Assembly (NCBI GenBank): GCA_002269645.1
Contig: NIVC01000538.1
Coordinates: 372,001 to 436,000, forward strand
Source: Macrostomum lignano
Taxonomy: Eukaryota
Direction: 5' to 3'
Length of the DNA stretch: 64,000 nt
The translations under genes were made by a program, and so were the position numbers. Shown one piece after another: positions 4,101 to 51,868 of the stretch (position 1 is the first letter of the stretch; each line of letters opens with the position of its first letter). The notes under the pieces were generated by a model. The model was not told the origin of the DNA. It saw only the letters and a list, made by a program, of their open reading frames with translations, and did no database searches.

Positions 4101-7100
4101 AGTCCACCAAGAATCTGTTGTCAAACGACAAATCGTCGGTCTCTGCCAACAGCAGCTCATGGATGCTGCTCCGACTGTTGAGTCTGCTCAGCGGCCACCG
4201 TGGCGTTGCTAGGGAGTCGGCCATCGTTGGAGCTCCGAAGCGGGCCACCATGAGCCGGCCTAGTTCTATTTTACTCGCGACCGAAGGGTCAGGTATTTTT
4301 AAACGATAAATTTAGATAGCTTCACGGTTGAACCTTCATCCAGCTCGCATTGGCTAACTGGGTACCAGACTAAATCTTGGTGTTGCCAAATGCATTAGCT
4401 GCGATCATATTCATTATTAAACAGTATGCGTTATTGCGTTTTTCCCGAAAAAAATCCTGGTCAAAGTCATGTTTAATACAGTTTTAGTTTTTATCCACTT
4501 GTTTTATTCTATTTGCATTGACTAAATAATTGAGCTCCTCCAGAGAGGGTCGGTCTGCTAGTCCACTATACTAAATCGTTATCTGAACTAGTTGTTAATT
4601 GAGCTCCCCAGAGAGGGTCAGTCTGCTAGTCCACTATACTAAATCGTTATCTGAACTAGTTGTTAATAAGCTCCCCCAGAGAGGGTCAGTGTGCTAGTCC
4701 ACTATACTAAATCGTTATCTGAACTAGTTGTTAATTGAGCTCCCCAGAGAGGGTCAGTGTGCTAGTCCACTATACTAAATCATCTGAACTAGTTGTTAAT
4801 TGAGCTCCCCCAGAGAGGGTCAGTGTGCTAGTCCACTATACTAAATCATCTGAACTAGTTGTTAATTGAGCTCCCCCAGAGAGGGTCAGTGTGCTAGTCC
4901 ACTACAGTCTACTAAATCCAAAGTCTATAAAGATGCAGCATTGTATTTTATCTTTCATATAGTTCATTTAAATTTCAAACAAAGACAAAGATAATAGGCA
5001 GTTTTATGCTTATAACTATCTTAACTATCATATTACCGCCACGCGGTAACGAAAAACTGACCTATAAAACTACCATACCTACCCTATGGTGAAAATTTGT
5101 GTTTTATCCATATTGTTTAACTTCCTATGTTTTTCACGTGCTCTTGAGGTGTGTCTAAAGTATTTGTCCGTTAATGCACGTGTTGTTTTTATCTTGTCTC
5201 TCATTCTTGTCCAGCCGGTTGGTTTAAGGACATCCGAGAGGTCGCCAGTAACGCCGGCAGCCGGGGTGCCAGCCCCCGGAAACAGAGTCGAGGTTTGTGC
5301 TGCCTTTGATGCTGCTTCCCTGCTTGAACCTCTACACTTCCGGGAATTCATAATTTTGGATGTTGGGGCTTAGGCATTTAGGGGTTCAGAGGTTTTGTGT
5401 TTAAGATGTTCATACCCGTGCAGGTGTTTGTGTGCTTTTCTGGTTATCTTAGGGGTGGGGTTGTCTGGGTTTTTGTACACTAGATTTTTGTAGCCTCTTG
5501 AGGATCTCTTGTACACCATCGGGGGTGTTTGTAGGCTCAGAGGGTCTCTTGTACACCATCGGGGGGTGTTTGTAGGCTCAGAGGGTCTCTTGTACACCAT
5601 CAGGGGTGTTTGTAGGCTCAGAGGGTCTCTTGTACACCATCGGGGGTGTTTGTAGGCTCACAGGGTTGTCTGTCCACGTCGTGCTTATTTGTTTGCAATA
5701 AGCTCTTTTTACATGTTGCTTACTTGTATAAATTTATATTTTACTTATCTAGCTAGTAGCCTGTAGCCTATTGGTAGTCATGCTTTAGCGTTGGCATGAT
5801 TGGCATGCTTTAGAAATGTTGTCTATTTATCAATGTTGTCTTCTAGAACCTGTTCCGCTTACAAGATTTCCGATAGAGGAAGCCATTTGCATCATGAATG
5901 GGTCTGATTTTTTTCTATTACTACGTTAAATTTGAAGGCCCAACATAAAATTTTTTATGCATACTTATTTGTGCGATCGAAATTGTAATATTTGTTGTTG
6001 TGCTGAAAGTAAAATGTGTTCTTATCTTAGTAATGATTCATACTAACATCTTTTCACTGCATAACTTTAAAGCTCACAAACATACCCTAAATCACACACT
6101 CATTAGCCTAAATCCCACACTCATTACCCTAAATCTCACACCCATTACCCTCAATCCCACACCCATTACCCTAAATCCCACACCATTACCCTAAATCCCA
6201 CACCATTACCCTAAATCCCACACCATTACCCTAAATCCCACACCAATACCCTAAATCCCACACCCATTACCCTAAATCCCACACCATTACCCTAAATCCC
6301 ACACCCATTACCCTAAATCCCACACCCATTACCCTAAATCCCACACCATTACCCTAATCCCACACCCATTACCCTACTTACTTACTTACTTACTACTGAC
6401 GGGGGGCGCAGGCGCCGCGAATAGGCCGCGAGGCCCCTATCGCAACCCCAAGGTAAAAGAGCACAAGGATTAGCCTTGGGGGTGCGCCCAGTCCCCGCCA
6501 GTAGTCGGCAGGTCCGCAGTGGAGGCATCGGCGACCCTCATCCGGCCGGAGTCCCGGACGAAGGCGCGGAGGTCTCGGATATTGTCCGCGGTGGTCAGCT
6601 CGTCCATCCGCTGGGGGTGGCCGAGGTATTTGTGCCGCGCCTTGTTGAAGTAAGGGCAGAAGGTGACGTGATGCTCCGCGGTCTCCTCTCCTATGCCACA
6701 GAAGGGACAGGTGGGAGGGCAACCGGTTTGCAACGATATATGTCTCTGGAAGAATCCGTGGCCGGTTAGGACCATGCACATCTCCCTGAGGTCGGTTCTG
6801 TTAAGCGAAATCAGATAATCAGAGACTTTCCTGTTCAGGTTAGGCATGGCAGAGCGGCTCTGCCTGTACTCGGTGCAGCTGTTCCAGTGGAGCTGGTGCT
6901 GCTGATGGAGCCACCTGTTGATATGGCGGGTGACTTGCGACCTGGGGGTGGGTAGCCTCATCAGACGGTGGTTGCCGTCTGGGTTGCTGCCCTCCTTGGC
7001 GAGAGAGTCCGCGAGCTCGTTGCCCAGGATGTTGCTGTGACCAGGTGTCCAGATAATTCTAATCCTGTTAAGGACTGAGAGAGATTGCACACTGCGGTGG

Positions 7101-8417
7101 CATTGAGATACTGTAGCAGCGGAGATATTCTCAGTGGTTAAGGCCTTAATAGCAGCTTGGCTATCAGTGTAGAAATTAATGTCAAAATTATTAATGTTCG
7201 CCTGAAACAGTTGCTGGGCACACTGCTCAATGGCGCAAATTTCAGCTTGGAAAACTGAGGTGTTCTCACCGAGGTGCAGACTTTCCTGGAGAAGCATCTT
7301 ACCCTCGTGGAAAATGGCAATACCCGCTCCAGCGCGGCCGTTGAACAGCGAGCCGTCGGTGAAGCAGTGAATGCCCTGGCTGCGCCGGTTCACACCGACA
7401 TCCAGCGGAATGTTGTCTCGGCCAGGGATGGCGGTCTTGAAGCCCCTCCTGATGTTGAGGGCGGGAGGTCGTCTATCCACATTGCCCAGGTCCATGTGGA
7501 TGTTGTTAAGGTCGCGGCGGACAAAGTCCATATGCGGGATTAATGTTTTCATTGGCATAAAGCCAGAGGGCGCGTTATTTAACGTTTTATCTCTGATAAG
7601 CCGGGAGGCAGACTTCATAGCCTCCGCCCTAATAAATAGGTGAAGCGGAGGTAGGTTAAGGATAGTGTTCAGCCCCTCGTAAGGGGTGGACGGGTACGCA
7701 CCTGTGATGGCACGGCAAATGCTGCCCTGAAGCTTATTCTTATCTTAGTAATGATTCATACTAACATCTTTTCACTGCATAACTTTAAAGCTCACAAACA
7801 TACCCTAAATCACACACTCATTAGCCTAAATCCCACACTCATTACCCTAAATCTCACACCCATTACCCTAAATCCCACACCATTACCCTAAATCCCACAC
7901 CATTACCCTAAATCCCACACCATTACCCTAAATCCCACACCATTACCCTAAATCCCACACCATTACCCTAAATCCCACACCCATTACCCTAAATCCCACA
8001 CCATTACCCTAAATCCCACACCCATTACCCTAAATCCCACACCCATTACCCTAAATCCCACACCATTACCCTAATCCCACACCCATTACCCTAAATCCCA
8101 CACCATTACCCTAAATCCCACACCATTACCCTAAATCCCACACCATTACCCTAAATCCCACACCATTACCCTAAATCCCACACCCATTACCCTAAATCCC
8201 ACACCATTACCCTAATCCCACACCCATTACCCTAAATCCCACACCATTACCCTAAATCCCACACCATTACCCTAAATCTCACACCCATTACCCTAAATCC
8301 CACACCATTACCCTAAATCCCACACCCCACCCACAGGCCCGCCCGTGGTGCTGAACGGAGAAGAATATGAAAACATTGAGGTCCGCGGTCGGGCCGGAAG
8401 CGGCGCCAGCGGCAGCA

Positions 8418-27344: not shown

Positions 27345-27414
27345 TTGCTTGTTCGAATCCTGTTGCTTTTAAATATCTCACATCTCCAGGCAGCTCTCTT
27401 CAACAAATAACTGC

Positions 27415-27745
27415 CAGTGTCAAAATCCATGTGGACAGTTTCAAAATCCATGTGGACAGTTTCAAAATCCATGTGGCCAGTGTCAAAATCCATGTGGCCA
27501 GTGTCAAAATCCATGTGGACAGTTTCAAAATCCATGTGGCCAGTGTCAAAATCCATGTGGCCAGTGTCAAAATCCATGTGGCCAGTGTCAAAATCCATGT
27601 GGCCAGTGTCAAAATCCATGTGGCCAGTGTCAAAATCCATGTGGCCAGTGTCAAAATCCATGTGGCCAGTGTCAAAATCCATGTGGCCAGTGTCAAAATC
27701 CATGTGGCCAGTGTCAAAATCCATGTGGCCAGTGTCAAAATCCAA
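27415..27745. repeat. 21-bp minisatellite GTGTCAAAATCCATGTGGCCA
   Basis: Directly visible. Confidence 0.93.
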
Positions 27746-28210
27746 CTTCCCTTCATTTTTAGTGTCTCTCAAAGCAATCACTGTTTGGCACTAACAGTCA
27801 AACTCATTGAGCGCACGGCCTCTCAATCTGCATAAATTTGCCCCAATCCTGTCCGCTTGGATTAACAGGATTAGCAGGATTAACGAGCGAATTCGAGCAG
27901 CAGAATTCGAAGTGTCGGATTTGTTTGAATTTCCTCGAACCTCGAGCTTCTTCTGCAATCATGCGCTTGTAAATGCGCTATATTATTGTTAATAATAAAG
28001 TAATTGTGCTTACAGAATTATGCCGTTAGTTAAAGCCGCTTGCTCCCGTTCCTATAATCTTTCTGTTAATTCCTTTGATTTTGTCAACAATTCCAATTGG
28101 TGTTGGCTGTCTTTGAAAATTTCTACAAAAGCGTCAAATTAAAATGGCGATTCTTGTGATGGGCATTAATTTTTTTAAACTGGATTTGCTTTTTGTCAAT
28201 TTTTCAGACT

Positions 28211-30666
28211 ATGGAAGCAAACGGTATTGATAATCCGATAAAATCTAGTGATCAACTAAATCTGATTGAGCAGCATAGTTGTAAATCTCGCGACAAAGAT
28301 CCCGATAACGACAAAGATCTTCTTAAAACTGACAAAGACCAAGATCCTAGAAGTGACAAAGACTCGGATCTAAGAAGCGACAAAGACCAGGAACTAAGAA
28401 GCGACAAAGACCAGGAACTAAGAAGCGACAAAGACCAGGACCTAAGAAGCGACAAAGACCAGGAACTAAGAAGCGACAAAGACCAGGACCTAAGAAGCGA
28501 CAAAGACCAGGACCTAAGAAGCGACAAAGACCAGGACCTAAGAAGCGACAAAGACCAAGACCTTAGAAGCGAAAAAGGCTCCGCTGGTTCAAACCAAGAT
28601 CCAAAACAAAGTTGCGAGCCGAACAAAGACCTGCAGCAGCCGGCCGAGCGCCCGTTTGCGCATCTCCGCGGCCTCAGCTCTGGCGACTTCCTTGACGCCG
28701 TAGCGTCCAGCGGTCGGTCGGCCTGCACCGTGTGCGGCCGCTCTCGCAAGTTCTACTGCCCCGTCTGCTGCGTGCCCGTGCCCAGCTCACAGCCGCTGCC
28801 CTCTGTTCGCCTGCCGTTCTCCGTTTGCGTGCTCAAGCACCCCGCCGAGTTCCACGGCAAGTCGACTTGACCGCACGCGGTGCTGCTCTCTCCCGACTGT
28901 CGGATTGTGCGATACCCGCTGCTGCCGGACCTCAGCTCTGGCTGTGTCGCGGTGGTGTACCCCGCGCCTGGCGCCCTGTCAGTTGCGGAGCTCGCCGTCA
29001 GGATGGCACCGCCGTCTGACAGCACCTGCGAGACTGACGATACTGGCGACAGCCGTCAGAAACTGCCGGAGGAGAGCATGAGGCAAGACTGACTGACTGA
29101 CTGACTGACTGACTGACTGACTGACTGACTGACTGACTGACTGACTGACTGACTGACTGACTGACTGACTGACTGACTGACTGACTGACTGACTGACTGA
29201 CTGACTGACTGACTGACTGACTGACTGACTGACTGACTGACTGACTGACTGACTGACTGACTGACTGACTGACTGACTGACTGACTGACTGACTGACTGA
29301 CTGACTGACTGACTGACTGACTGACTGACTGACTGACTGACTGACTGACTGACTGACTGACTGACTGACTGACTGACTGACTGACTGACTGACTGACTGA
29401 CTGACTGACTGACTGACTGACTGACTGACTGACTGACTGACTGACTGACTGACTGACTGACTGACTGACTGACTGACTGACTGACTGACTGACTGACTGA
29501 CTGACTGACTGACTGACTGACTGACTGACTGACTGACTGACTGACTGACTGACTGACTGACTGACTGACTGACTGACTGACTGACTGACTGACTGACTGA
29601 CTGACTGACTGACTGACTGACTGACTGACTGACTGACTGACTGACTGACTGACTGACTGACTGACTGACTGACTGACTGACTGACTGACTGACTGACTGA
29701 CTGACTGACTGACTGACTGACTGACTGACTGACTGACTGACTGACTGACTGACTGACTGACTGACTGACTGACTGACTGACTGACTGACTGACTGACTGA
29801 CTGACTGACTGACTGACTGACTGACTGACTGACTGACTGACTGACTGACTGACTGACTGACTGACTGACTGACTGACTGACTGACTGACTGACTGACTGA
29901 CTGACTGACTGACTGACTGACTGACTGACTGACTGACTGACTGACTGACTGACTGACTGACTGACTGACTGACTGACTGACTGACTGACTGACTGACTGA
30001 CTGACTGACTGACTGACTGACTGACTGACTGACTGACTGACTGACTGACTGACTGACTGACTGACTGACTGACTGACTGACTGACTGACACTGAGACTGA
30101 GGAATAGTCAGACACTGAGACTGAGGAATAGTCAGACAGTGAGACTGAGGAATAGTCAGACACTGAGACTGAGGAATAGTCAGACAGTGAGACTGAGGAA
30201 TAGTCAGACAGTGAGACTGAGGAATAGTCAGACACTGAGACTGAGGAATAGTCAGACAGTGAGACTGGGGAATAGTCAGACGTTAACCCGAGCCAGCTGG
30301 CCCCGCAGGCGGTGGACGGTGCTGTTCCTGGACGCCACCTGGCACCAGGCCAATGGCATGATTAACGACGATCGTCTCCGAAGCCTGCCCCGCGTTGCCC
30401 TTAGCAACCACTCAAGCCACTACTGGCGCTACGAGGCGGGCCTGAGCCCCAGCCACCTGTCCACCATAGAGGCAATCTACTACCTGGCCGTTGATCTGCA
30501 CCTGGCACTGCGCCAGCTGGGCTACTGGCCCGGCGCGGACGAGTACGACGGTCGGTACGACAACCTGCTGCTGTACTTCAACCACCTGTACCGTCTGCTG
30601 TACGCCAACTATGATGGCGGCCGGGCCTGTGGAGAACGGAAACGGCGTCACTTTCAGTTGAAATGA
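28211..30666 (+). CDS. DTWD1: DTW domain protein 1 (tRNA-uridine aminocarboxypropyltransferase) with one in-frame TGA; recoded gene or pseudogene
   Basis: Exons 28211-29082 and 30309-30666, joined by a GC-AG intron (AG|GCAAGA ... CCGCAG|G, phase 2). Motifs: CTVC..RKFYCPVCC, LKHPAEFHGKST*PHAVLLSP, LFLDATWHQ (DXTW), LSTIEAIYY, YDNLLLYF. The TGA at 28868-28870 is codon 220 of 409. Confidence 0.9.
29088..30088. repeat. Pure (GACT)n microsatellite, about 250 units, followed by a 24-bp repeat to ~30280
   Basis: Uninterrupted GACT run filling the DTWD1 intron, then CACTGAGACTGAGGAATAGTCAGA units. Confidence 0.97.
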
Positions 30667-30879
30667 TGATTGCGTCATCTTGTCTGCAGCTAATTATATG
30701 ATATGATTGCATTTATCTTAAAATTGTATGATAACTAGCTCTGTGAAAATAACTTTTTTTTTACTTTTTTCATTTGCTTTTTGTCTACTGTTAGTAGGAT
30801 AAATAGATTCTGGCGCGTAGAACAGAATTCTAATTCAAGTTTTCGAGGATCTGTAGCTTATCAGTGTTAACGGTTAATG

Positions 30880-32103
30880 CCATCGTTGGGTCTTCATGCC
30901 ATCCTTGGGTCTTCATGCCATCGTTGGGTCTTCATGCCATCGTTGGGTCTTCATGCCATCGTTGGGTCTTCATGCCATCGTTGGGTCTTCATGCCATCGT
31001 TGGGTCTTCATGCCATCCTTGGGTCTTCATGCCATCGTTGGGTCTTCATGCCATCCTTGGGTCTTCATGCCACCCTTGGGTCTTCATGCCACCCTTGGGT
31101 CTTCATGCCACCCTTGGGTCTTCATCCTACCCTTGGGTCTTCATGCCACCCTTGGGTCTTCATCCCACCCTTGGGTCTTCATCCTACCCTTGGGTCTTCA
31201 TGCCACCCTTGGGTCTTCATGCCACCCTTGGGTCTTCATCCTACCCTTGGGTCTTCATGCCATCCTTGGGTCTTCATGCCACCCTTGGGTCTTCATGCCA
31301 CCCTTGGGTCTTCATGCCACCCTTGGGTCTTCATCCTACCCTTGGGTCTTCATGCCACCCTTGGGTCTTCATCCCACCCTTGGGTCTTCATCCTACCCTT
31401 GGGTCTTCATGCCACCCTTGGGTCTTCATGCCACCCTTGGGTCTTCATGCCACCCTTGGGTCTTCATGCTACCCTTGGGTCTTTGTGCCACCCTTGGGTC
31501 TTCATGCCACCCTTGGGTCTTCATGCCATCATTGGGTCTTCATGCCACCATTGGGTCTTCATGCGATCATTGGGTCTTCATCCTACCCTTGGGTCTTCAT
31601 CCCACCCTTGGGTCTTCATCCCACCCTTGGGTCTTCATCCCACCCTTGGGTCTTCATCCTACCCTTGGGTCTTCATGCCACCCTTGGGTCTTCATGCCAC
31701 CCTTGGGTCTTTGTGCCACCCTTGGGTCTTCATGCCACCATTGGGTCTTCATGCGATCGTTGGGTCTTCATCCTACCCTTGGGTCTTCATCCTACCCTTG
31801 GGTCTTCATCCCACCCTTGGGTCTTCATCCCACCCTTGGGTCTTCATCCCACCCTTGGGTCTTCATCCTACCCTTGGGTCTTCATGCCATCATTGGGTGT
31901 TCATGCCACCATTGGGTCTTCATGCCATCATTGGGTCTTCATCCCACCCTTGGGTCTTCATGCCACCCTTGGGTCTTCATCCCACCCTTGGGTCTTCATG
32001 CCACCCTTGGGTCTTCATCCCACCCTTGGGTCTTCATGCCACCCTTGGGTCTTCATCCCACCCTTGGGTCTTCATCCTACCCTTGGGTCTTCATCCCACC
32101 CTT
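30880..32103. repeat. 19-bp minisatellite CTTGGGTCTTCATGCCACC
   Basis: Directly visible, between DTWD1 and the KIAA0930 homolog. Confidence 0.93.
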
Positions 32104-32196
32104 GTGTCTTGCATTCGCAGTTCACTGCCGGCAGTGCAGCTCGCAGTTCCCCAATTTCCAGCCGCAGTCAGCAGCCGCAGCAGCAACCGGCGGACA

Positions 32197-35100
32197 ATGG
32201 ACCCGGCCAATCCAGTTCGATTCAACATCGGCTGCCAAAGCGACTCCGACGATCTCGAAGGCGAACTGCCGGAACAGCGGGCGGGCGCAGACGAGGAGAG
32301 CGATGGTTATTACAATGATGCCGAGTCGGAGGCTGCCAGAGACGCAATGAGCAGGAGCAGCTCGCTGCAGCGCATCCTCGCCTCAATCTCCGTTGAGCGT
32401 CGTTTGTCGTCCTCGTTGTCGACTTCGACTTCGGCGACAACGGCGTCGCAGACCCGGCCGAGTCGAAACAAGTTCTGGAGCCAGCTGCTGGTGCAGCACT
32501 TTCTTGAGGACGGAGGCGGCGGCGGCGAGATCAAGGACGGTGACGAGTTCAAGGACGATCTCGTGTTTTATGTTCGCCGAAGACTGCCGGATCGGGGAGA
32601 GGCGGCCGCTGCCAGCAGCTCTTCTTCGATTGGTACTACGGTTGAGGTGCGCCCTGCTGTACTGCGGCTCTGGGACAGAGAGGGTCAGGGAGAGGGAATG
32701 ATGGCCTGGGAGTTTTGAACTTTGGAGACTGAGAGTCAGAGGCTCAGAATCAGAGTGAGTCGCAAGAGTAGGAGTTGCATAGAGTCGCAGAGTGAGAGTC
32801 AGAGAGAGAGTCGCAGAGTGAGAGTCAGAGAGAGAGTCGCAGAGTGAGAGTCAGAGAGAGAGTCGCAGAGTGAGAGTCAGAGAGAGAGTCGCAGAGTGAG
32901 AGTCAGAGAGAGAGTCGCAGAGTGAGAGTCAGAGAGAGAGTCGCAGAGTGAGAGTCAGAGAGAGAGTCGCAGAGTGAGAGTCAGAGAGAGAGTCGCAGAG
33001 TGAGAGTCAGAGAGAGAGTCGCAGAGTGAGAGTCAGAGAGAGAGTCGCAGAGTGAGAGTCAGAGAGAGAGTCGCAGAGTGAGAGTCAGAGAGAGAGTCGC
33101 AGAGTGAGAGTCAGAGAGAGAGAGAGTCGCAGAGTGAGAGTCAGAGAGCGAACTGGTCAGAGAGAACTGGTCAGACAGAGAACTGGTCAGAGAGAACTGG
33201 GAGAACTGGTCAGAGAGAACTGGTCAGAGAGAACTGGTCAGAGAGAACTGGTCAGAGAGAACTGGGAGAACTGGTCAGAGAGAACTGGTCAGACAGAGAA
33301 CTGGTCAGAGAGAACTGGTCAGAGAGAACTGGGAGAACTGGTCAGAGAGAACTGGTCAGAGAGAACTGGTCAGAGAGAACTGGGAGAACTGGTCAGAGAG
33401 AACTGGTCAGAGAGAACTGGTCAGAGAGAACTGGTCAGACAGAGAACTGGTCAGAGAGAACTGGTCAGAGAGAACTGGTCAGAGAGAACTGGTCAGAGAG
33501 AACTGGGAGAACTGGTCAGAGAGAACTGGTCAGACAGAGAACTGGTCAGAGAGAACTGGTCAGAGAGAACTGGGAGAACTGGTCAGAGAGAACTGGTCAG
33601 AGAGAACTGGTCAGAGAGAACTGGGAGAACTGGTCAGAGAGAACTGGTCAGAGAGAACTGGTCAGAGAGAACTGGTCAGACAGAGAACTGGTCAGAGAGA
33701 ACTGGTCAGAGAGAACTGGTCAGAGAGTGACAGCTGCAGTGTGATAGCCATAATCATATTCAGAGTCAGACAGTGCAACAATGGCTCCGGCCTAGTGCGC
33801 GACAAAAGTCAAGGTCACCCAGGCTGGGCACGTGACAGCAGCTGGCAGCACATGCACTGCTTGATTGACTGCCGCTAAGTGTTCCTTGGCGCGCTTTCAC
33901 GTGATCGACAACTGCCATTTTTTCACTTCAGTTTGAATTGAAATGTAAACGCAGTGCAGTTGAAGGTGCAATTGCATTTGGAGCTGTTGTTTTTAGATGA
34001 TCGATATGAGATTTGATGCACGGGGGGTCTTGACTTGCAGCCCGTATCTGTCTGTTGGTCTGCCTATTCTGACAGCAGTTGCTGGACCAGTCGGGATGAG
34101 AGGTTTAGGCAGCAAAGTGCTGATTGAAATTCTGGAGGAATGTCCTTGGCATCTGTCGAACTTTGTGTATCCATCCTGACTGTTGGGTTCACACCTGCTG
34201 TTCTTATAAAGTACCAACTGATGAAGTTTGTTGCAATAATAGCTCGCTCTTCGCCTGCCACAAGAAAGATTTTTTGGATGCTTTCTGAACTTTGACATTC
34301 TAACTGAATTTGTCAGGTGGAAACTTTTCTAGTCAGATGGGTTTAGAATGGAACAGATCTCAGTGCCGTGAGATTCTCATGAGAAACAGATCTCAGTGCC
34401 GTGAGATTCTCATGAGAAACAGATCTTAGTGCCGTGAGATGCTCATGAGAAACAGATCTCAGTGCCGTGAGATTCTCATGAGAAACAGATCTTAGTGCCG
34501 TGAGATTCTCATGAGAAACAGATCTCAGTGCCGTGAGATTCTCATGAGAAACAGATCTCAGTGCCGTGAGATTCTCATGAGAAACAGATCTTAGTGCCGT
34601 GAGATTCTCATGAGAAACAGATCTCAGTGCCGTGAGATTCTCATGAGAAACAGATCTTAGTGTCACAGGGACAGTGAGATTCTCATGAGAAACAGATCTC
34701 AGTGCAGTGAGATTCTCATGAGAAACAGATCTCAGTGCCGTGAGATTCTCATGAGAAGCAGATCTCAGTGCAGTGAGATTCTCATGAAAAACATCTCAGT
34801 GTCACAGGGACAGTGAGATTCTCATGAGAAACAGATCTCAGTGTCACAGGGACAGTGAGATTCTCATGAGAAACAGATCTCAGTGCCACAATGAGATTCT
34901 CATGACAGCCAATCCCAACGAGAGAAGCGTGAGCTAAGTACCTTACCATTCCCAAATCCCCTCAGGTGCACCGCAAGCACAAGCACAACTACAGACTGAT
35001 CCTGGCCGATCAGCTGATAGACCTGGAGGAGAGCGTGTACCTGAACCTGATCATGCAGCGGTTCGCGTACACCGTGACCTGCGCCGTGTGCACTCGCACC

Positions 35101-36456
35101 GGGGCCCGGGAGCTGCAGATCCTGCGCCGGTTCACCAGCCGGGTGTTCGCCAGTCCCAGCCGGCACTGCATGGACGGCAAGGCCTGCAGGGAGGAGATCA
35201 CCTACCCGAACATCTTCTTCAGCGTGCACAACTATGATGAGCTATTCGCCGACTGTGTTGTTAGGGACTCCGAGCTGCTCTGCGTTGAGCTGGTGGCCTG
35301 CGACCGGCGGGGACGCCTGCAGGTGCGATTGGTGGGGAGAAGTAGGTATGGGGACTAAGAGAAGTAGGTATGGGGACTGGGAGAAGTAGGTATGGGGACT
35401 GGGAGAAGTAGGTATGGGGACTGGGAGAAGTAGGTATGGGGACTGGGAGAAGTAGGTATGGGGACTGGGAGAAGTAGGTAGAGATTGGGAGAAGTAGGTA
35501 GGTACATGCATGTAGATAGAGACAGGAGCGGAGAGGAGCGGAGAGACAGGAGTACTCATAGAGACAGGAGCGGAGAGGAGCGGAGAGACAGGAGTACTCA
35601 TAGAGACAGGAGCGGAGAAGCAGGTGTGCGAGTCTAAACAGAGTGGTACAGCACACTGGGTCATAAATCTAAAAAACTGAAATTGCCTCGCCAATCAGGG
35701 AGTTCTGTTCCTGGGCAGCATCCGGTACGAGTCGGTGCTGGAGGTGTACCAGGCCAGGGCTGGCGGCGGCACCAGAGGCGGCAGCTCTTCGTCCGCCCCG
35801 GCCGGCGGTCAGGCGCCGTCCGGCTGGCTATTCCGGTCAGTCTCGGCCGCTTCCTCTGCCTCGGTTGGCCGGCGCCGGGTGGAGTTCCTGCGGATGCGCG
35901 GGCCGCACGGCAAGGGCCACGCCGAGGTCGCCGTGACGGCGGCGCCGGCGCCAGTCGGTGAAGACGGCGCCTCTCAGCGGGAGTCCAGGCGGGAGCGGCG
36001 ACTGTCGGGGGGAGTCGGCGGCGTCGGCGGCTTCCGCGGCGGCGGGATGAAGAAGTCGCGCTCGGACTCCGCCAATATCGACTCGACGGGAGGCGGCGGC
36101 GGCGGCGAGGTGCCCCCGCAGTCCGGCGCTCCCGACGGGCCCGATTTCGGCCAGCCAGCAGCGAAGTCGAGGCCCGCGACATCGAAGAAGAATTTGGCGA
36201 CGAAGACGGCGACGGCGAGGCCGCCGAGCCAGCGGCTGACGACGGCGGAGCTGCCGGCGGTGGCAGCGGCGGTGTCTGGCAGATCGGCAAGTCGTTCGGG
36301 CAGGCGTGGCACTGGTTCAAGGAGCGGCGGCGTGCCGGCTCCGTGTCGCTGAGCGCATGCCTCACTTACGTGTCGCTGCCATGGCACCGCATTGTGGCCG
36401 ACTTGCTAGACACCCGGCAGCAGCCAGTGCTGGCGTTTGACCTGCCCGCTGGCTGA
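32197..36456 (+). CDS. KIAA0930: KIAA0930 (C22orf9)-like conserved protein; apparent -1 frameshift near 36151
   Basis: Exons 32197-32646, 34966-35322 and 35699-36456. Motifs: KDDLVFYVRR, EESVYLNLIMQ, VFASPSRHCMDGK, YPNIFF, CVELVA, GSIRYE, EFLRMRGPHGKGHAEVAV, MKKSRS. The conserved tail SEVEA..GKSFGQAWHWFKERRRA..LTYVSLPWHRIVADLL is in the -1 frame. Confidence 0.88.
32780..33725. repeat. Adjacent 26-bp (GAGTCGCAGAGTGAGAGTCAGAGAGA) and 14-bp (GAGAACTGGTCAGA) arrays
   Basis: Directly visible; the unit switches near 33145. Confidence 0.92.
34355..34900. repeat. 33-bp minisatellite with palindrome TTCTCATGAGAA
   Basis: CATGAGAAACAGATCTCAGTGCCGTGAGATTCT units. Confidence 0.92.
35335..35625. repeat. 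22-bp repeat GGGAGAAGTAGGTATGGGGACT plus a short GA-rich repeat in a KIAA0930 intron
   Basis: Directly visible. Confidence 0.8.
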
Positions 36457-40308: not shown

Positions 40309-40835
40309 GAAATATCTGATTCACTGTGCTGACCCCGCGGGTGAGCCCTGGATTCCGTATTGAATGAAGTTGCAGTTTTCGAGCCAATTCAAAAGTTCGA
40401 AAGGTCGGCCAAATTTAGTTCTGAAAAGGGGTCAAGCAAATTAGCAGATAGATTATCTTATTTTACACCCTTTTTGCAGTCTATCTACTGCGTCAGGTGC
40501 TTGTGTTGGCACTATAAAACTTCTTTATCAGTGCTTTCCTGCTCCTAATAAAACACCTCATGACAGGTCTCTGTGCGACCCGTTTTCCGCCACCTTTTTT
40601 ACCTGTGTTTTTTCAGCTACTGAATCTTTTCCGTTGCTTGTCAGCGGAATAAATCACGGTCTGCTGATAATGCCAGGTGTTGAGAGCGGGCTGTCTCTTA
40701 ATGACAGTGAACCAGGTGCCAAAGCTCACGCTTGTAAAAATGCTGCCAGAGATTAACAATAGAGATAAGCAGGGGCGCTGCTCTCACTGCACTGCACGCG
40801 ACTGCATTGTGATCTGCGCTTGCTGAGAATATAAT

Positions 40836-41402
40836 GGATTGCTAATCTAGCCAGCATCACAAATAAAAGAATAGAATGGATTGCTAATCTAGCCAGCATC
40901 ACAAATAAAAGAATAGAATGGATTGCTAATCTAGCCAGCATCACAAATAAAAGAATAGAATGGATTGCTAATCTAGCCAGCATCACAAATAAAAGAATAG
41001 AATGGATTGCTAATCTAGCCAGCATCACAAATAAAAGAATAGAATGGATTGCTAATCTAGCCAACATCACAAATAAAAGAATAGAATGGATTGCTAATCT
41101 AGCCAGCATCACAAATAAAAGAATAGAATGGATTGCTAATCTAGCCAGCATCACAAATAAAAGAATAGAATGGATTGCTAATCTAGCCAGCATCACAAAT
41201 AAAAGAATAGAATGGATTGCTAGTCTAGCCAGCATCACAAATAAAAGAATAGAATGGATTGCTAATCTAGCCAACATCACAAATAAAAGAATAGAATGGA
41301 TTGCTAATCCAGCCAGCATCAATGATGAAGGAATAGAATGGATTGCTGATCTAGCCAGCATCAATGATGAAGGAATAGAATGGATTGCTGATCTAGCCAA
41401 CG
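40836..41402 (-). repeat. 42-bp minisatellite family, copy 2 (inverted, CTTTTATTTGT variant)
   Basis: Reverse complement of the unit at 570-1138. Confidence 0.93.
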
Positions 41403-49660: not shown

Positions 49661-51868
49661 ATGTTGGCTAGATTAGCAAACCATTCTATTCCTTCATCAG
49701 TGATGCTGGCTAGATTAGCAAACCATTCTATTCCTTCATTTATGATGTTGGTTAGATTAGCAATCCATTCTATTCCTTCATCAGTGATGCTGGCTAGATT
49801 AGCAATCCATTCTATTCCTTCATCAGTGATGCTGGCTAGATTAGCAATCCATTCTATTCCTTCATCAGTGATGTTGGCTAGATTAGCAAACCATTCTATT
49901 CCTTCATCAGTGATGTTGGCTAGATTAGCAATCCATTCTATTCCTTCATTTATGATGTTGGCTAGATTAGCAATCCATTCTATTCCTTCATTTATGATGT
50001 TGGCTAGATTAGCAATCCATTCTATTCCTTCATTTATGATGTTGGCTAGATTAGCAATCCATTCTATTCCTTCATTTATGATGTTGGCTAGATTAGCAAT
50101 CCATTCTATTCCTTCATCAGTGATGCTGGCTAGATTAGCAATCCATTCTATTCCATCATCAGTGATGTTGGCTAGATTAGCAATCCATTCTACTCCTTCA
50201 TCAGTGATGTTGGCTAGATTAGCAATCCATTCTATTCCTTCATCAGTGATGTTGGCTAGATTAGCAATCCATTCTATTCCTTCATCAGTGATGCTGGCTA
50301 GATTAGCAATCCATTCTATTCCTTCATCAGTGATGCTGGCTAGATTAGCAATCCATTCTATTCCTTCATCAGTGATGCTAGCTAGATTAGCAATCCATTC
50401 TATTCCTTCATCAGTGATGCTGGCTAGATTAGCAATCCATTCTATTCCTTCATCAGTGACTGGCTAGATTAGCAATCCATTCTATTCCTTCATCATTGAT
50501 GCTGGCTAGATTAGCAATCCATTCTATTCCTTCATCAGTGATGCTAGCTAGATTAGCAATCCATTCTATTCCTTCATCAGTGATGCTGGCTAGATTAGCA
50601 ATCCACTCTATTCCTTCATCAGTGACTGGCTAGATTAGCAATCCATTCTATTCCTTCATCATTGATGCTGGCTAGATTAGCAATCCACTCTATTCCTTCA
50701 TCAGTGACTGGCTAGATTAGCAATCCATTCTATTCCTTCATCATTGATGCTGGCTAGATTAGCAATCCACTCTATTCCTTCATCAGTGATGCTAGCTAGA
50801 TTAGCAATCCATTCTATTCCTTCATCAGTGATGCTGGCTAGATTAGCAATCCATTCTATTCCTTCATCAGTGATATTGGCTAGATTAGCAATCCATTCTA
50901 TTCCATCATCAGTGATGCTGGCTAGATTAGCAATCCATTCTATTCCTTCATCAGTGATTTTGGCTAGATTAGCAATCCATTCTATTCCTTCATCAGTGAT
51001 GTTGGCTAGATTAGCAATCCATTCTATTCCTTCATCAGTGACTGGCTAGATTAGCAATCCATTCTATTCCTTCATCATTGATGCTGGCTAGATTAGCAAT
51101 CCGTTTTATTCCTTCATCAGTGATGCTGGCTAGATTAGCAATCCATTCTATTCCTTCATCAGTGATGCAGGCTAGATTAGCAATCCATTCTATTCTTTTA
51201 TTTGTGATGCTGGCTAGATTAGCAATCCATTCTATTCCATCATCATTGATGCTGGCTAGATTAGCAATCCATTCTATTCCTTCATCAGTGATGCTGGCTA
51301 GATTAGCAATCCATTCTATTCCTTCATCAGTGATGCTGGCTAGATTAGCAATCCATTCTATTCCTTCATCAGTGATGCTGGCTAGGTTAGCAATCCATTC
51401 TATTCCTTCATCAGTGATGCTGGCTAGATTAGCAATCCATTCTATTCCTTCATCAGTGATGCTGGCTAGATTAGCAATCCACTCTATTCCTTCATCAGTG
51501 ACTGGCTAGATTAGCAATCCATTCTATTCCTTCATCATTGATGCTGGCTAGATTAGCAATCCATTCTATTCCTTCATCAGTGATGCTAGCTAGATTAGCA
51601 ATCCATTCTATTCCTTCATCAGTGATGCTGGCTAGATTAGCAATCCATTCTATTCCTTCATCAGTGATGCTGGCTAGATTAGCAATCCATTCTATTCTTT
51701 TATTTGTGATGCTGGCTAGATTAGCAATCCATTCTATTCCTTCATCAGTGATGCTGGCTAGATTAGCAATCCATTCTATTCCTTCATCAGTGATGCTGGC
51801 TAGATTAGCAATCCACTCTATTCCTTCATCAGTGATGCTGGCTAGATTAGCAATCCATTCTATTCCTT
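49661..51868 (+). repeat. 42-bp minisatellite family, copy 3 (about 52 units)
   Basis: Same unit as 570-1138, with occasional 3-bp-deleted units and CTTTTATTTGT variant units. Confidence 0.95.

What the first reader, a model, noticed from the sequence alone, without database searches (positions are those of the whole stretch)
28840..28900. In-frame UGA in the conserved core of an otherwise intact DTWD1: candidate selenocysteine or stop-codon readthrough
Seen: GGC AAG TCG ACT TGA CCG CAC GCG GTG CTG CTC reads GKST*PHAVLLSP, with no frame change and no intron signals around it. Everything downstream is intact: the GC-AG intron, DATW, LSTIEAIYY, YDNLL and the final stop at 30664-30666. The context is UGA-C, followed by GC-rich local hairpins (ACCG-CACG-CGGT; CCGA-CTG-TCGG). 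Established: human DTWD1 reads roughly GKSTAIHAKLLAP here, the DXTW motif downstream is essential for acp3U formation, and UGA-C is the leakiest stop context. To my knowledge DTWD1 is not a known selenoprotein. Inference: it could be Sec insertion, regulated readthrough of a tRNA-modifying enzyme, a recent nonsense allele on a duplicated chromosome copy, or a base-call error. I found only non-canonical AUGA/UGA stem candidates in the 3' UTR (30661-30714, 30703-30732) and no convincing SECIS.
Basis: partly seen in the sequence, partly recalled or inferred. Interest (0 to 1): 0.8.

Follow-up and report, generated by a model that had tools for sequence, protein, structure and literature searches.

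The report
Premature stop in one DTWD1 gene copy
One of the three assembled copies of the tRNA-modifying gene DTWD1 in the recently duplicated genome of the flatworm Macrostomum lignano carries an ordinary premature stop codon where the other copies encode serine, and nothing indicates selenocysteine or programmed readthrough.

Summary
TGA sits at 28868-28870, codon 220 of an otherwise open DTWD1 reading frame, inside the conserved GKST[A/S]xHA motif.

The window is Macrostomum lignano assembly Mlig_3_7, contig NIVC01000538.1. GenBank already annotates a 220-residue product that ends at this TGA.

I recovered the two other assembled copies of the locus (L001, L003). Both read TCG (Ser) at this codon. 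The window differs by two adjacent bases.

Among 156 DTW-domain homologues the aligned residue is Ala 108, Ser 27, Gly 6 and Cys only 4. It is a small-residue position at the start of helix alpha1, not a redox Cys/Sec site.

- No SECIS was found: Rfam at E<=10 gave none, and my own pattern scan gave 0.
- RNA after the TGA folds no better than shuffled sequence (z +0.24).
- The gene's own terminator is TGA TGA.

The copies differ at about 1% of coding sites (5 synonymous, 3 non-synonymous). This matches the published 1.1% divergence between duplicated coding sequences in this neopolyploid, so the intact downstream sequence simply reflects a young mutation.

Verdict: a derived nonsense allele in a redundant duplicated copy, most likely loss of function. 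Recoding is not supported. Interest is low.

The parts
28208..28870 (+). Publicly annotated truncated coding sequence of this copy (220 aa, T+MEANG...GKST). Its 5' end lies directly after the acceptor-like tttttcag, and it ends at the TGA in question.
   Evidence: P0009 is encoded at L002 10001-10663, which equals window 28208-28870. The annotation pipeline sets 5' ends from mapped trans-splice reads.
28211..29082 (+). DTWD1 exon 1 (ATG at 28211), under the GC-AG intron model.
   Evidence: Translation. Pfam DTW hit.
28331..28577 (+). In-frame 24-nt tandem repeat that encodes (SDKDQ[D/E]LR)n in the disordered N-terminus. The window has 10 units and the two other copies have 23.
   Evidence: TRF. 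Repeat counts. pLDDT is below 50 for the equivalent N-terminus of the model.
28724..28771 (+). Cys-x2-Cys...Cys-x2-Cys(Cys) zinc-finger motif (CTVCGRSRKFYCPVCC), upstream of the stop.
   Evidence: Sequence. The four Cys are invariant in the alignment of eight DTWD1 proteins. The equivalent zinc finger is described in the TapT structure (PMC12630136).
28868..28870 (+). The in-frame TGA, codon 220. The two other assembled copies have TCG (Ser).
29083..30308 (+). Intron with GC donor and AG acceptor. It holds a perfect (GACT)250 microsatellite (29087-30089) and a 24-nt array (30087-30281). An alternative GT-AG model is 28997-30279.
30309..30666 (+). DTWD1 exon 2 with the D-x-T-W motif (DATW, 30331-30342), LSTIEAIYY and YDNLL. 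The terminator is TGA at 30664-30666, followed by a second TGA.
30667..30876 (+). 3' UTR candidate region, up to the 19-nt minisatellite. It holds no SECIS.
   Evidence: Rfam E<=10 scan, own SECIS pattern scan, fold z -0.58.

Best explanation
The TGA is a genuine, derived nonsense mutation in one of the three assembled duplicated copies of DTWD1 (tRNA-uridine aminocarboxypropyltransferase 1) in the neopolyploid genome of Macrostomum lignano line DV1.

How it arose (inferred): the ancestral codon was a serine codon, TCG as in the other copies. It changed at two adjacent bases, either in one tandem event or through TCA or TGG.

What it does (inferred): translation of this copy stops at codon 220. 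The product keeps the disordered repeat region, the zinc finger and strand beta1. It lacks helix alpha1, the other strands, the D-x-T-W motif and the knotted SAM-binding fold, so it should be catalytically dead. The stop lies 212 nt upstream of the last exon junction, so the mRNA is also a plausible target of nonsense-mediated decay.

Why it is tolerated (inferred): the intact copies supply the function.

Why the rest of the gene looks perfect: the mutation is young. The copies differ by only about 1% in coding sequence.
For: Origin of the window:
- It is identical to NIVC01000538.1 of GCA_002269645.1.

The other copies:
- L001 (NIVC01001688.1, protein PAA65064.1) and L003 (NIVC01003087.1) share the same neighbours: the upstream arrays, DTWD1, the 19-mer array and the DUF2045 gene.
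- Both have TCG at this codon.
- A linked synonymous difference 8 nt upstream (AAG against AAA) shows the window is a distinct haplotype at this point.

Divergence:
- 10 nt differ over 983 non-repeat coding sites: 5 synonymous, 3 non-synonymous, plus the 2 in this codon.
- Flanks differ by 2.2-2.8%.
- The published divergence between duplicated copies in this assembly is 1.1% in coding sequence and 2.2% genome-wide. About 70% of the assembly is present in three copies (PMC10733133).

The residue:
- Homologues have Ala 108, Ser 27, Gly 6, Cys 4, Val 4, Ile 3, Thr 2 at this column. Ser is therefore ancestral-like and the stop is derived.

The truncation:
- In the AlphaFold model (pTM 0.75) the residue is the first of helix alpha1, directly after beta1 and the GKST loop. 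Everything downstream of it would be lost.
- The model matches E. coli TapT and SPOUT methyltransferases.

The base call:
- The assembly was polished with Illumina genomic and RNA-seq reads (PMC5730564). Mis-polishing from the other copies would give CG, not GA.

Tolerance:
- Human DTWD1 single knockout has little growth effect (PMC6895100).
Against: - No raw reads or transcripts could be examined, so the base call itself is not independently verified.
- L001 and L003 are identical across the gene except in microsatellite length. They may be one haplotype assembled twice, so '2 of 3 copies' could in effect be '1 of 2'.
- The copy has no second lesion. Pseudogenisation therefore rests on this single codon.
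- The neighbouring gene shows 1-nt homopolymer discrepancies between copies, so the assembly is not error-free.
Confidence: 0.8

Rival explanations
1. Assembly or polishing artefact: the real sequence of this copy has a sense codon, and the GA dinucleotide is a consensus error.
For: - Mlig_3_7 is a PacBio/Canu assembly of a triplicated, repeat-rich genome.
- In the neighbouring DUF2045 gene the three copies differ by single-base homopolymer lengths: C5 against C6 at window 36113-36117, and G5 against G6 in L003. These differences shift the C-terminal frame and look like residual indel errors.
Against: - The difference is two adjacent substitutions outside any homopolymer, which is not the typical PacBio error type.
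- Pilon polishing used Illumina genomic and RNA-seq reads.
- Reads mis-mapped from the other copies would carry CG, so they cannot create GA.
- A linked private synonymous variant 8 nt away supports a true distinct haplotype.
Confidence: 0.1
2. Functional stop-codon readthrough: the UGA-C is decoded by a near-cognate tRNA often enough to yield a useful amount of full-length enzyme from this copy.
For: - The stop is UGA followed by C, the leakiest tetranucleotide according to established knowledge.
- The downstream frame is fully intact, and its few differences from the other copies are 2 synonymous and 2 non-synonymous.
Against: - Only the +4 C is present. The following bases are CCG CAC, not the CUAG-type extension.
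- There is no stable downstream structure (z +0.24).
- The stop is not shared by the other copies.
- It lies in the middle of the catalytic domain, not at the end of a reading frame as in known programmed cases.
- The downstream sequence is equally explained by the roughly 1% age of the duplicates, with too few substitutions to test for selection.
- The stop is 212 nt upstream of an exon junction, which favours mRNA decay.
Confidence: 0.06
3. Selenocysteine insertion: DTWD1 of this copy is a selenoprotein.
For: An in-frame UGA in a conserved region of an otherwise intact gene.
Against: - No SECIS in 28000-32500 with Rfam at E<=10, and no Rfam family at gathering score anywhere in the window.
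- My own quartet and helix scan of 28871-32200 found 0 candidates.
- The homologous position is Ala/Ser, with Cys in 4 of 156 homologues.
- Both other copies have Ser TCG.
- No paper in the library links DTWD1 to being a selenoprotein: four papers hold both words, none of them on that topic by title or abstract.
- acp transfer from SAM is not redox chemistry (established knowledge; PMC12630136).
Confidence: 0.01

Closest known systems
Nonsense-bearing redundant duplicate (incipient pseudogene) after whole-genome duplication
   Same: - One of several near-identical duplicated copies carries a single disabling mutation, while sister copies stay intact.
- Divergence equals the genome-wide divergence between duplicated copies.
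- The host genome is a documented neopolyploid with three subgenomes (PMC10733133).
   Different: There is only one lesion so far. It is not shown whether the allele is fixed, expressed or degraded.
DTWD1 / TapT (TuaA, YfiP) family of SAM-dependent tRNA acp3U transferases (DTW domain, TDD superfamily)
   Same: - Pfam DTW domain.
- Zinc-finger cysteines.
- GKST[A/S]xHA and D-x-T-W motifs.
- Predicted SPOUT-like fold that matches the TapT crystal structures.
- Best named hits are DTWD1 orthologues.
   Different: - The reading frame of this copy is interrupted at codon 220.
- It has an extra N-terminal octapeptide repeat region that the homologues retrieved here lack.
Eukaryotic selenoprotein genes (UGA plus a 3' UTR SECIS)
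   Same: An in-frame UGA inside a conserved domain.
   Different: - No SECIS.
- No Cys or Sec at the homologous position in relatives.
- The UGA is not conserved even among copies within the same genome.
Programmed translational readthrough genes (for example UGA-CUAG genes of animals, from my own knowledge)
   Same: UGA followed by C.
   Different: - No CUAG-type extension or downstream structure.
- The stop is internal to the catalytic domain rather than at the natural C-terminus.
- The stop codon is not conserved.

Membership tests
DTWD1 / DTW-domain acp transferase | DTW domain detected above the curated threshold | tested here: met
   PF03942, 85.7 bits against a cut-off of 33.7, residues 181-386 of the conceptual protein.
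DTWD1 / DTW-domain acp transferase | D/E-x-T/S-W motif | tested here: met
   DATW at 30331-30342. D, T and W are invariant in the 8-sequence alignment. The motif's role is described in PMC12630136.
DTWD1 / DTW-domain acp transferase | N-terminal four-cysteine zinc finger | tested here: met
   CTVC...CPVC at 28724-28771. The four Cys are invariant.
DTWD1 / DTW-domain acp transferase | SPOUT-like knotted fold similar to TapT | tested here: met
   Tested on the intact paralogue P0001. pTM is 0.75. Foldseek hits to TapT 9kz5, 9kza and 9kyt have probability 0.97-1.00 and TM 0.48-0.57 normalised to the target. The knot itself was not checked.
DTWD1 / DTW-domain acp transferase | Uninterrupted reading frame that encodes the whole domain | tested here: not met
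   TGA at codon 220. The other two copies are uninterrupted.
DTWD1 / DTW-domain acp transferase | acp3U20-forming activity | not testable with these tools
   Needs tRNA mass spectrometry after knock-down, or a recombinant enzyme assay.
Eukaryotic selenoprotein gene | SECIS element in the 3' UTR | tested here: not met
   No SECIS family hit at E<=10 in 28000-32500. My own pattern scan found 0 candidates.
Eukaryotic selenoprotein gene | Cys or Sec at the aligned position in homologues | tested here: not met
   Ala 108, Ser 27, Gly 6, Cys 4, Val 4, Ile 3, Thr 2.
Eukaryotic selenoprotein gene | UGA conserved in paralogues or orthologues | tested here: not met
   TCG in L001 and L003. Other Macrostomum species were not available.
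Programmed stop-codon readthrough | Leaky stop context | tested here: inconclusive
   The sequence is UGA C CGC. Only the +4 C is favourable, and C at +4 is common in this GC-rich exon.
Programmed stop-codon readthrough | Stimulatory downstream RNA structure | tested here: not met
   z +0.24 against shuffles for the 100 nt from the stop. The same sequence is present in the Ser-encoding copies.
Programmed stop-codon readthrough | Evolutionary conservation of the stop together with the downstream frame | tested here: not met
   The stop is private to this copy.
Programmed stop-codon readthrough | Ribosome density or peptide beyond the stop | not testable with these tools
   Needs Ribo-seq or mass spectrometry.
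Nonsense allele in a redundant duplicated copy | Intact paralogous copies in the same genome at the divergence expected for duplicated copies | tested here: met
   L001 and L003: 1.0% divergence in coding sequence and 2.2-2.8% in flanks. Published values are 1.1% and 2.2%.
Nonsense allele in a redundant duplicated copy | The stop is the derived state | tested here: met
   Sister copies have Ser, and outgroup homologues have Ala or Ser.
Nonsense allele in a redundant duplicated copy | The variant is present in raw reads | not testable with these tools
   No read-level data can be reached here.

The most novel reading that the evidence does not exclude
The TGA-bearing copy is retained and expressed for one of two reasons:
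- Basal near-cognate decoding of UGA-C yields a low dose of full-length acp3U transferase, making this a tuned, weakened duplicate.
- The 219-residue fragment (repeat region plus zinc finger) has a function of its own, for example as a tRNA-binding competitor.

The sequence data do not exclude either reading, because the copy carries no second lesion.
Probability: 0.04. Interest if true: 0.4.

Novelty: already known. Interest (0 to 1): 0.1.

Why it matters
It matters little in itself. It is one more disabled duplicate in a genome that is shedding redundancy after a recent whole-genome duplication, and the public annotation already ends the protein at this codon.

- Practical value: anyone who knocks down or edits DTWD1 in M. 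lignano should target the intact copies. This codon, together with the linked AAG/AAA variant, is a convenient copy-specific marker.
- Value for the scan: an in-frame stop in an otherwise perfect gene of a neopolyploid should first be compared with the sister copies before recoding is invoked.

Tried and rejected
Dead ends and work-arounds:
- The look-up of the UniRef protein P0001 in the contig index found nothing. The NCBI cluster members P0009 and P0010 worked instead.
- Two word-indexed protein searches with DUF2045 exons returned no M. lignano proteins, which exhausted that tool. I then rebuilt the exact 497-aa annotated neighbour protein from three exons. Its cluster led to the third locus.
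- A sequence search of the PDB with P0001 found nothing. The fold search did find matches.
- The supplement of PMC10733133 does not list these scaffolds, so the copies could not be assigned to the S, L1 or L2 subgenomes.
- No paper mentions Mlig011284.
- The bacterial promoter and terminator scan is irrelevant for this eukaryote.
- Rfam over the whole window at gathering thresholds gave nothing.

Ideas considered and rejected:
- A cryptic short intron that removes the TGA. The residues on both sides align colinearly, without a gap, to the conserved GKST[A/S]xHAxLL[A/S]P motif.
- A reassigned UGA. This gene's own terminator is TGA TGA.
- Re-initiation at the next in-frame ATG (codon 267). The product would lack the zinc finger and beta1.

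Not attempted:
- A formal dN/dS test of the segment after the stop, because only four substitutions are available.

Full report
**1. Observation**

The sequence at 28840-28900 reads GGC AAG TCG ACT TGA CCG CAC GCG GTG CTG CTC, as reported. Counting from ATG 28211, the TGA (28868-28870) is codon 220.

I joined exon 1 (28211-29082) to exon 2 (30309-30666) across a GC...AG intron. This gives a 1230-nt reading frame whose only internal stop is this TGA. It ends at TGA 30664-30666, followed directly by a second TGA.

With X at the stop, a single Pfam DTW domain (PF03942, E 4.6e-24) spans residues 181-386, so the stop lies inside the domain. DATW (30331-30342), LSTIEAIYY and YDNLL are all present.

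**2. Where the window comes from**

A protein search found a Macrostomum lignano protein, UniRef A0A1I8JLU2, named tRNA-uridine aminocarboxypropyltransferase 1. Its 90% cluster holds two NCBI proteins.

- P0009 (220 aa) is exactly T+MEANG...GKST. It is encoded on NIVC01000538.1 of GCA_002269645.1 (assembly Mlig_3_7).
- The fetched locus L002 is 100% identical to window 18208-38870. The window is therefore NIVC01000538.1:372001-436000.
- GenBank already annotates a product that stops at this TGA (gene model 28208-28870).

According to the assembly paper, the annotation is a genome-guided RNA-seq assembly. Its 5' ends come from mapped trans-splice reads, and its reading frames come from TransDecoder (PMC5730564). 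This fits a model that starts right after tttttcag at 28208.

**3. The other copies**

- P0010 (PAA65064.1, Mlig011284g2) lies on NIVC01001688.1 (locus L001).
- The UniRef model of the same allele uses a GT-AG intron instead, equivalent to window 28997-30279. Both models are in frame. The RNA-seq-guided one favours GC-AG.

To find a third copy I used the neighbouring gene.

- I rebuilt the exact 497-aa product of the downstream DUF2045 gene from exons 32164-32646, 34966-35322 and 35699-36352.
- Its cluster contains three M. lignano proteins.
- The third one led to locus L003 on NIVC01003087.1. L003 carries an unannotated DTWD1 copy.

In both L001 and L003 the codon is TCG (Ser). The window differs at two adjacent bases, 28869 G/C and 28870 A/G, and at a synonymous AAG/AAA site 8 nt upstream.

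L001 and L003 are identical over every non-microsatellite part of the gene. They differ in (GACT)n length (223 against 153 copies; the window has 250) and in upstream arrays. They also share an LTR-retrotransposon insertion that the window lacks. They may be the two closely related large-chromosome subgenomes, or one haplotype assembled twice.

**4. Is the divergence ordinary?**

Over 983 non-repeat coding sites the window differs from the other version at 10 nt (1.0%):

- 5 synonymous changes;
- 3 non-synonymous changes (T173S, P286L, E369D);
- the 2 changes in codon 220.

Flanks differ by 13/586 upstream and 6/215 in the 3' UTR, which is 2.2-2.8%, plus small indels.

The published self-comparison of Mlig_3_7 reports the following (PMC10733133):

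- about 70% of the assembly is present in three copies;
- a SNP rate of 2.2% genome-wide and 1.1% in coding sequence;
- 2.41% between the S and L subgenomes, and 1.91% between L1 and L2.

The locus is therefore a typical set of duplicated copies. With roughly one quarter of sites synonymous, my rough estimate is dS about 0.02 and dN about 0.004. Both copies were thus under purifying selection for most of their separate history, and the stop must be recent. This alone explains why everything downstream is intact. Only four substitutions lie after the stop (2 synonymous, 2 non-synonymous), which is too few to test for selection there.

**5. Selenocysteine**

- An Rfam scan of 28000-32500 at E<=10 returned only four chance-level snoRNA and miRNA hits and no SECIS.
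- The whole window has no Rfam hit at gathering score.
- My own scan of 28871-32200 found nothing. It required the A/G-UGA...GA quartet with at least 4 bp in helix 1, at least 8 bp in helix 2 and an AA or CC bulge.
- The 3' UTR folds like shuffled sequence (z -0.58).
- A full HMMER search of 1.84 billion representative proteins gave 930 relatives. In an alignment of P0001 with 155 retrieved homologues, the column aligned to the TGA holds Ala 108, Ser 27, Gly 6, Cys 4, Val 4, Ile 3 and Thr 2. This is a small-residue position, not a Cys/Sec position.
- No paper in the library links DTWD1 to being a selenoprotein.

Selenocysteine is effectively excluded at the sequence level.

**6. Readthrough**

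- Only the +4 C is favourable. The following bases are CCG CAC.
- The 100 nt from the stop fold at -35.4 kcal/mol against -36.3 +/- 3.7 for shuffles (z +0.24).
- The same downstream sequence is present in the Ser-encoding copies, so it did not evolve for this stop.
- The stop is internal to the catalytic domain and private to one copy.
- It lies 212 nt upstream of the exon junction. Under the exon-junction model this predicts nonsense-mediated decay. That is an inference and is untested in this species.

Trace basal readthrough cannot be excluded, but nothing suggests it is programmed.

**7. Consequence for the protein**

- An AlphaFold model of the intact paralogue (pTM 0.75) places the residue as the first of helix alpha1, directly after strand beta1 (VCVLKH) and the HPxExxGKST loop.
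- The model matches the E. coli TapT crystal structures (probability 0.97-1.00, TM 0.48-0.57 normalised to the target) and the SPOUT methyltransferase TrmJ.
- In TapT, SAM sits in a crevice formed by the beta1-alpha1, beta3, beta4 and knot regions. The Asp of D-x-T-W lies near the sulfonium (PMC12630136).

A product that ends at residue 219 keeps only the disordered repeat region, the zinc finger and beta1, so it should be inactive. In human cells the DTWD1 single knockout has little growth effect, and only the DTWD1/DTWD2 double knockout is severe (PMC6895100). Loss of one of several copies should therefore be tolerated.

**8. Artefact?**

The assembly is Canu on PacBio reads, polished by Pilon with Illumina genomic and RNA-seq reads.

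- The neighbouring DUF2045 gene shows 1-nt homopolymer differences between copies that shift its C-terminal frame. Residual indel errors are therefore likely in this assembly.
- The TGA differs by two adjacent substitutions outside any homopolymer.
- Reads borrowed from the other copies would carry CG, not GA.
- A private linked synonymous variant lies 8 nt away.

I rate an artefact at about 10%.

**9. Verdict**

This is a derived nonsense allele in one duplicated copy of DTWD1 in a neopolyploid flatworm. It is already annotated as a truncated protein. Recoding is not supported. It is of low interest and of a known kind.

Noticed in passing
window 29087-30089 (intron of DTWD1); L001 and L003 equivalents: A perfect (GACT)n microsatellite of 250 units with 100% matches fills most of the intron. 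The other two copies have 223 and 153 units. This is the only difference between L001 and L003 within the gene.
   Followed up: partly
window 28331-28577: An in-frame 24-nt repeat encodes SDKDQ(D/E)LR. The window has 10 units and the other copies have 23. This is a rapidly changing, disordered N-terminal extension that the DTWD1 homologues retrieved here lack.
   Followed up: partly
window 36113-36117 (DUF2045 gene, last exon); L003 about 13763: The three copies of the neighbouring DUF2045 gene differ by single-base homopolymer lengths (C5 against C6; G5 against G6 in L003). This gives three different annotated C-termini of 497, 526 and 396 aa. The cause is either residual PacBio indel errors or real frameshifts.
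   Followed up: partly
window 28997-30279 versus 29083-30308: Two public gene models of the paralogue disagree on the intron: GT-AG in the UniProt/WormBase-type model and GC-AG in the RNA-seq-guided GenBank model. Both are in frame.
   Followed up: partly
between window 26753 and 26805; L001 1866-6487; L003 1-3700: The other two copies carry an LTR-retrotransposon insertion (RVT, RNase H and integrase reading frame of about 1340 aa) upstream of DTWD1. It is absent from the window.
   Followed up: no
window 27429-27794: A 121-aa 'gene' is annotated on the 21-nt tandem array (27413-27744). It is probably a spurious reading frame inside a minisatellite. In L001 the equivalent is a 439-aa reading frame.
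   Followed up: no
whole window, e.g. 573-1138, 40826-41399 and 49661-51868 (same 42-nt unit); 6083-6376 and 7801-8326; 30877-32110: About 30 separate minisatellite arrays with units of 12-68 nt occupy a large share of the 64 kb. The same 42-nt unit recurs at three places, once in reverse orientation.
   Followed up: no
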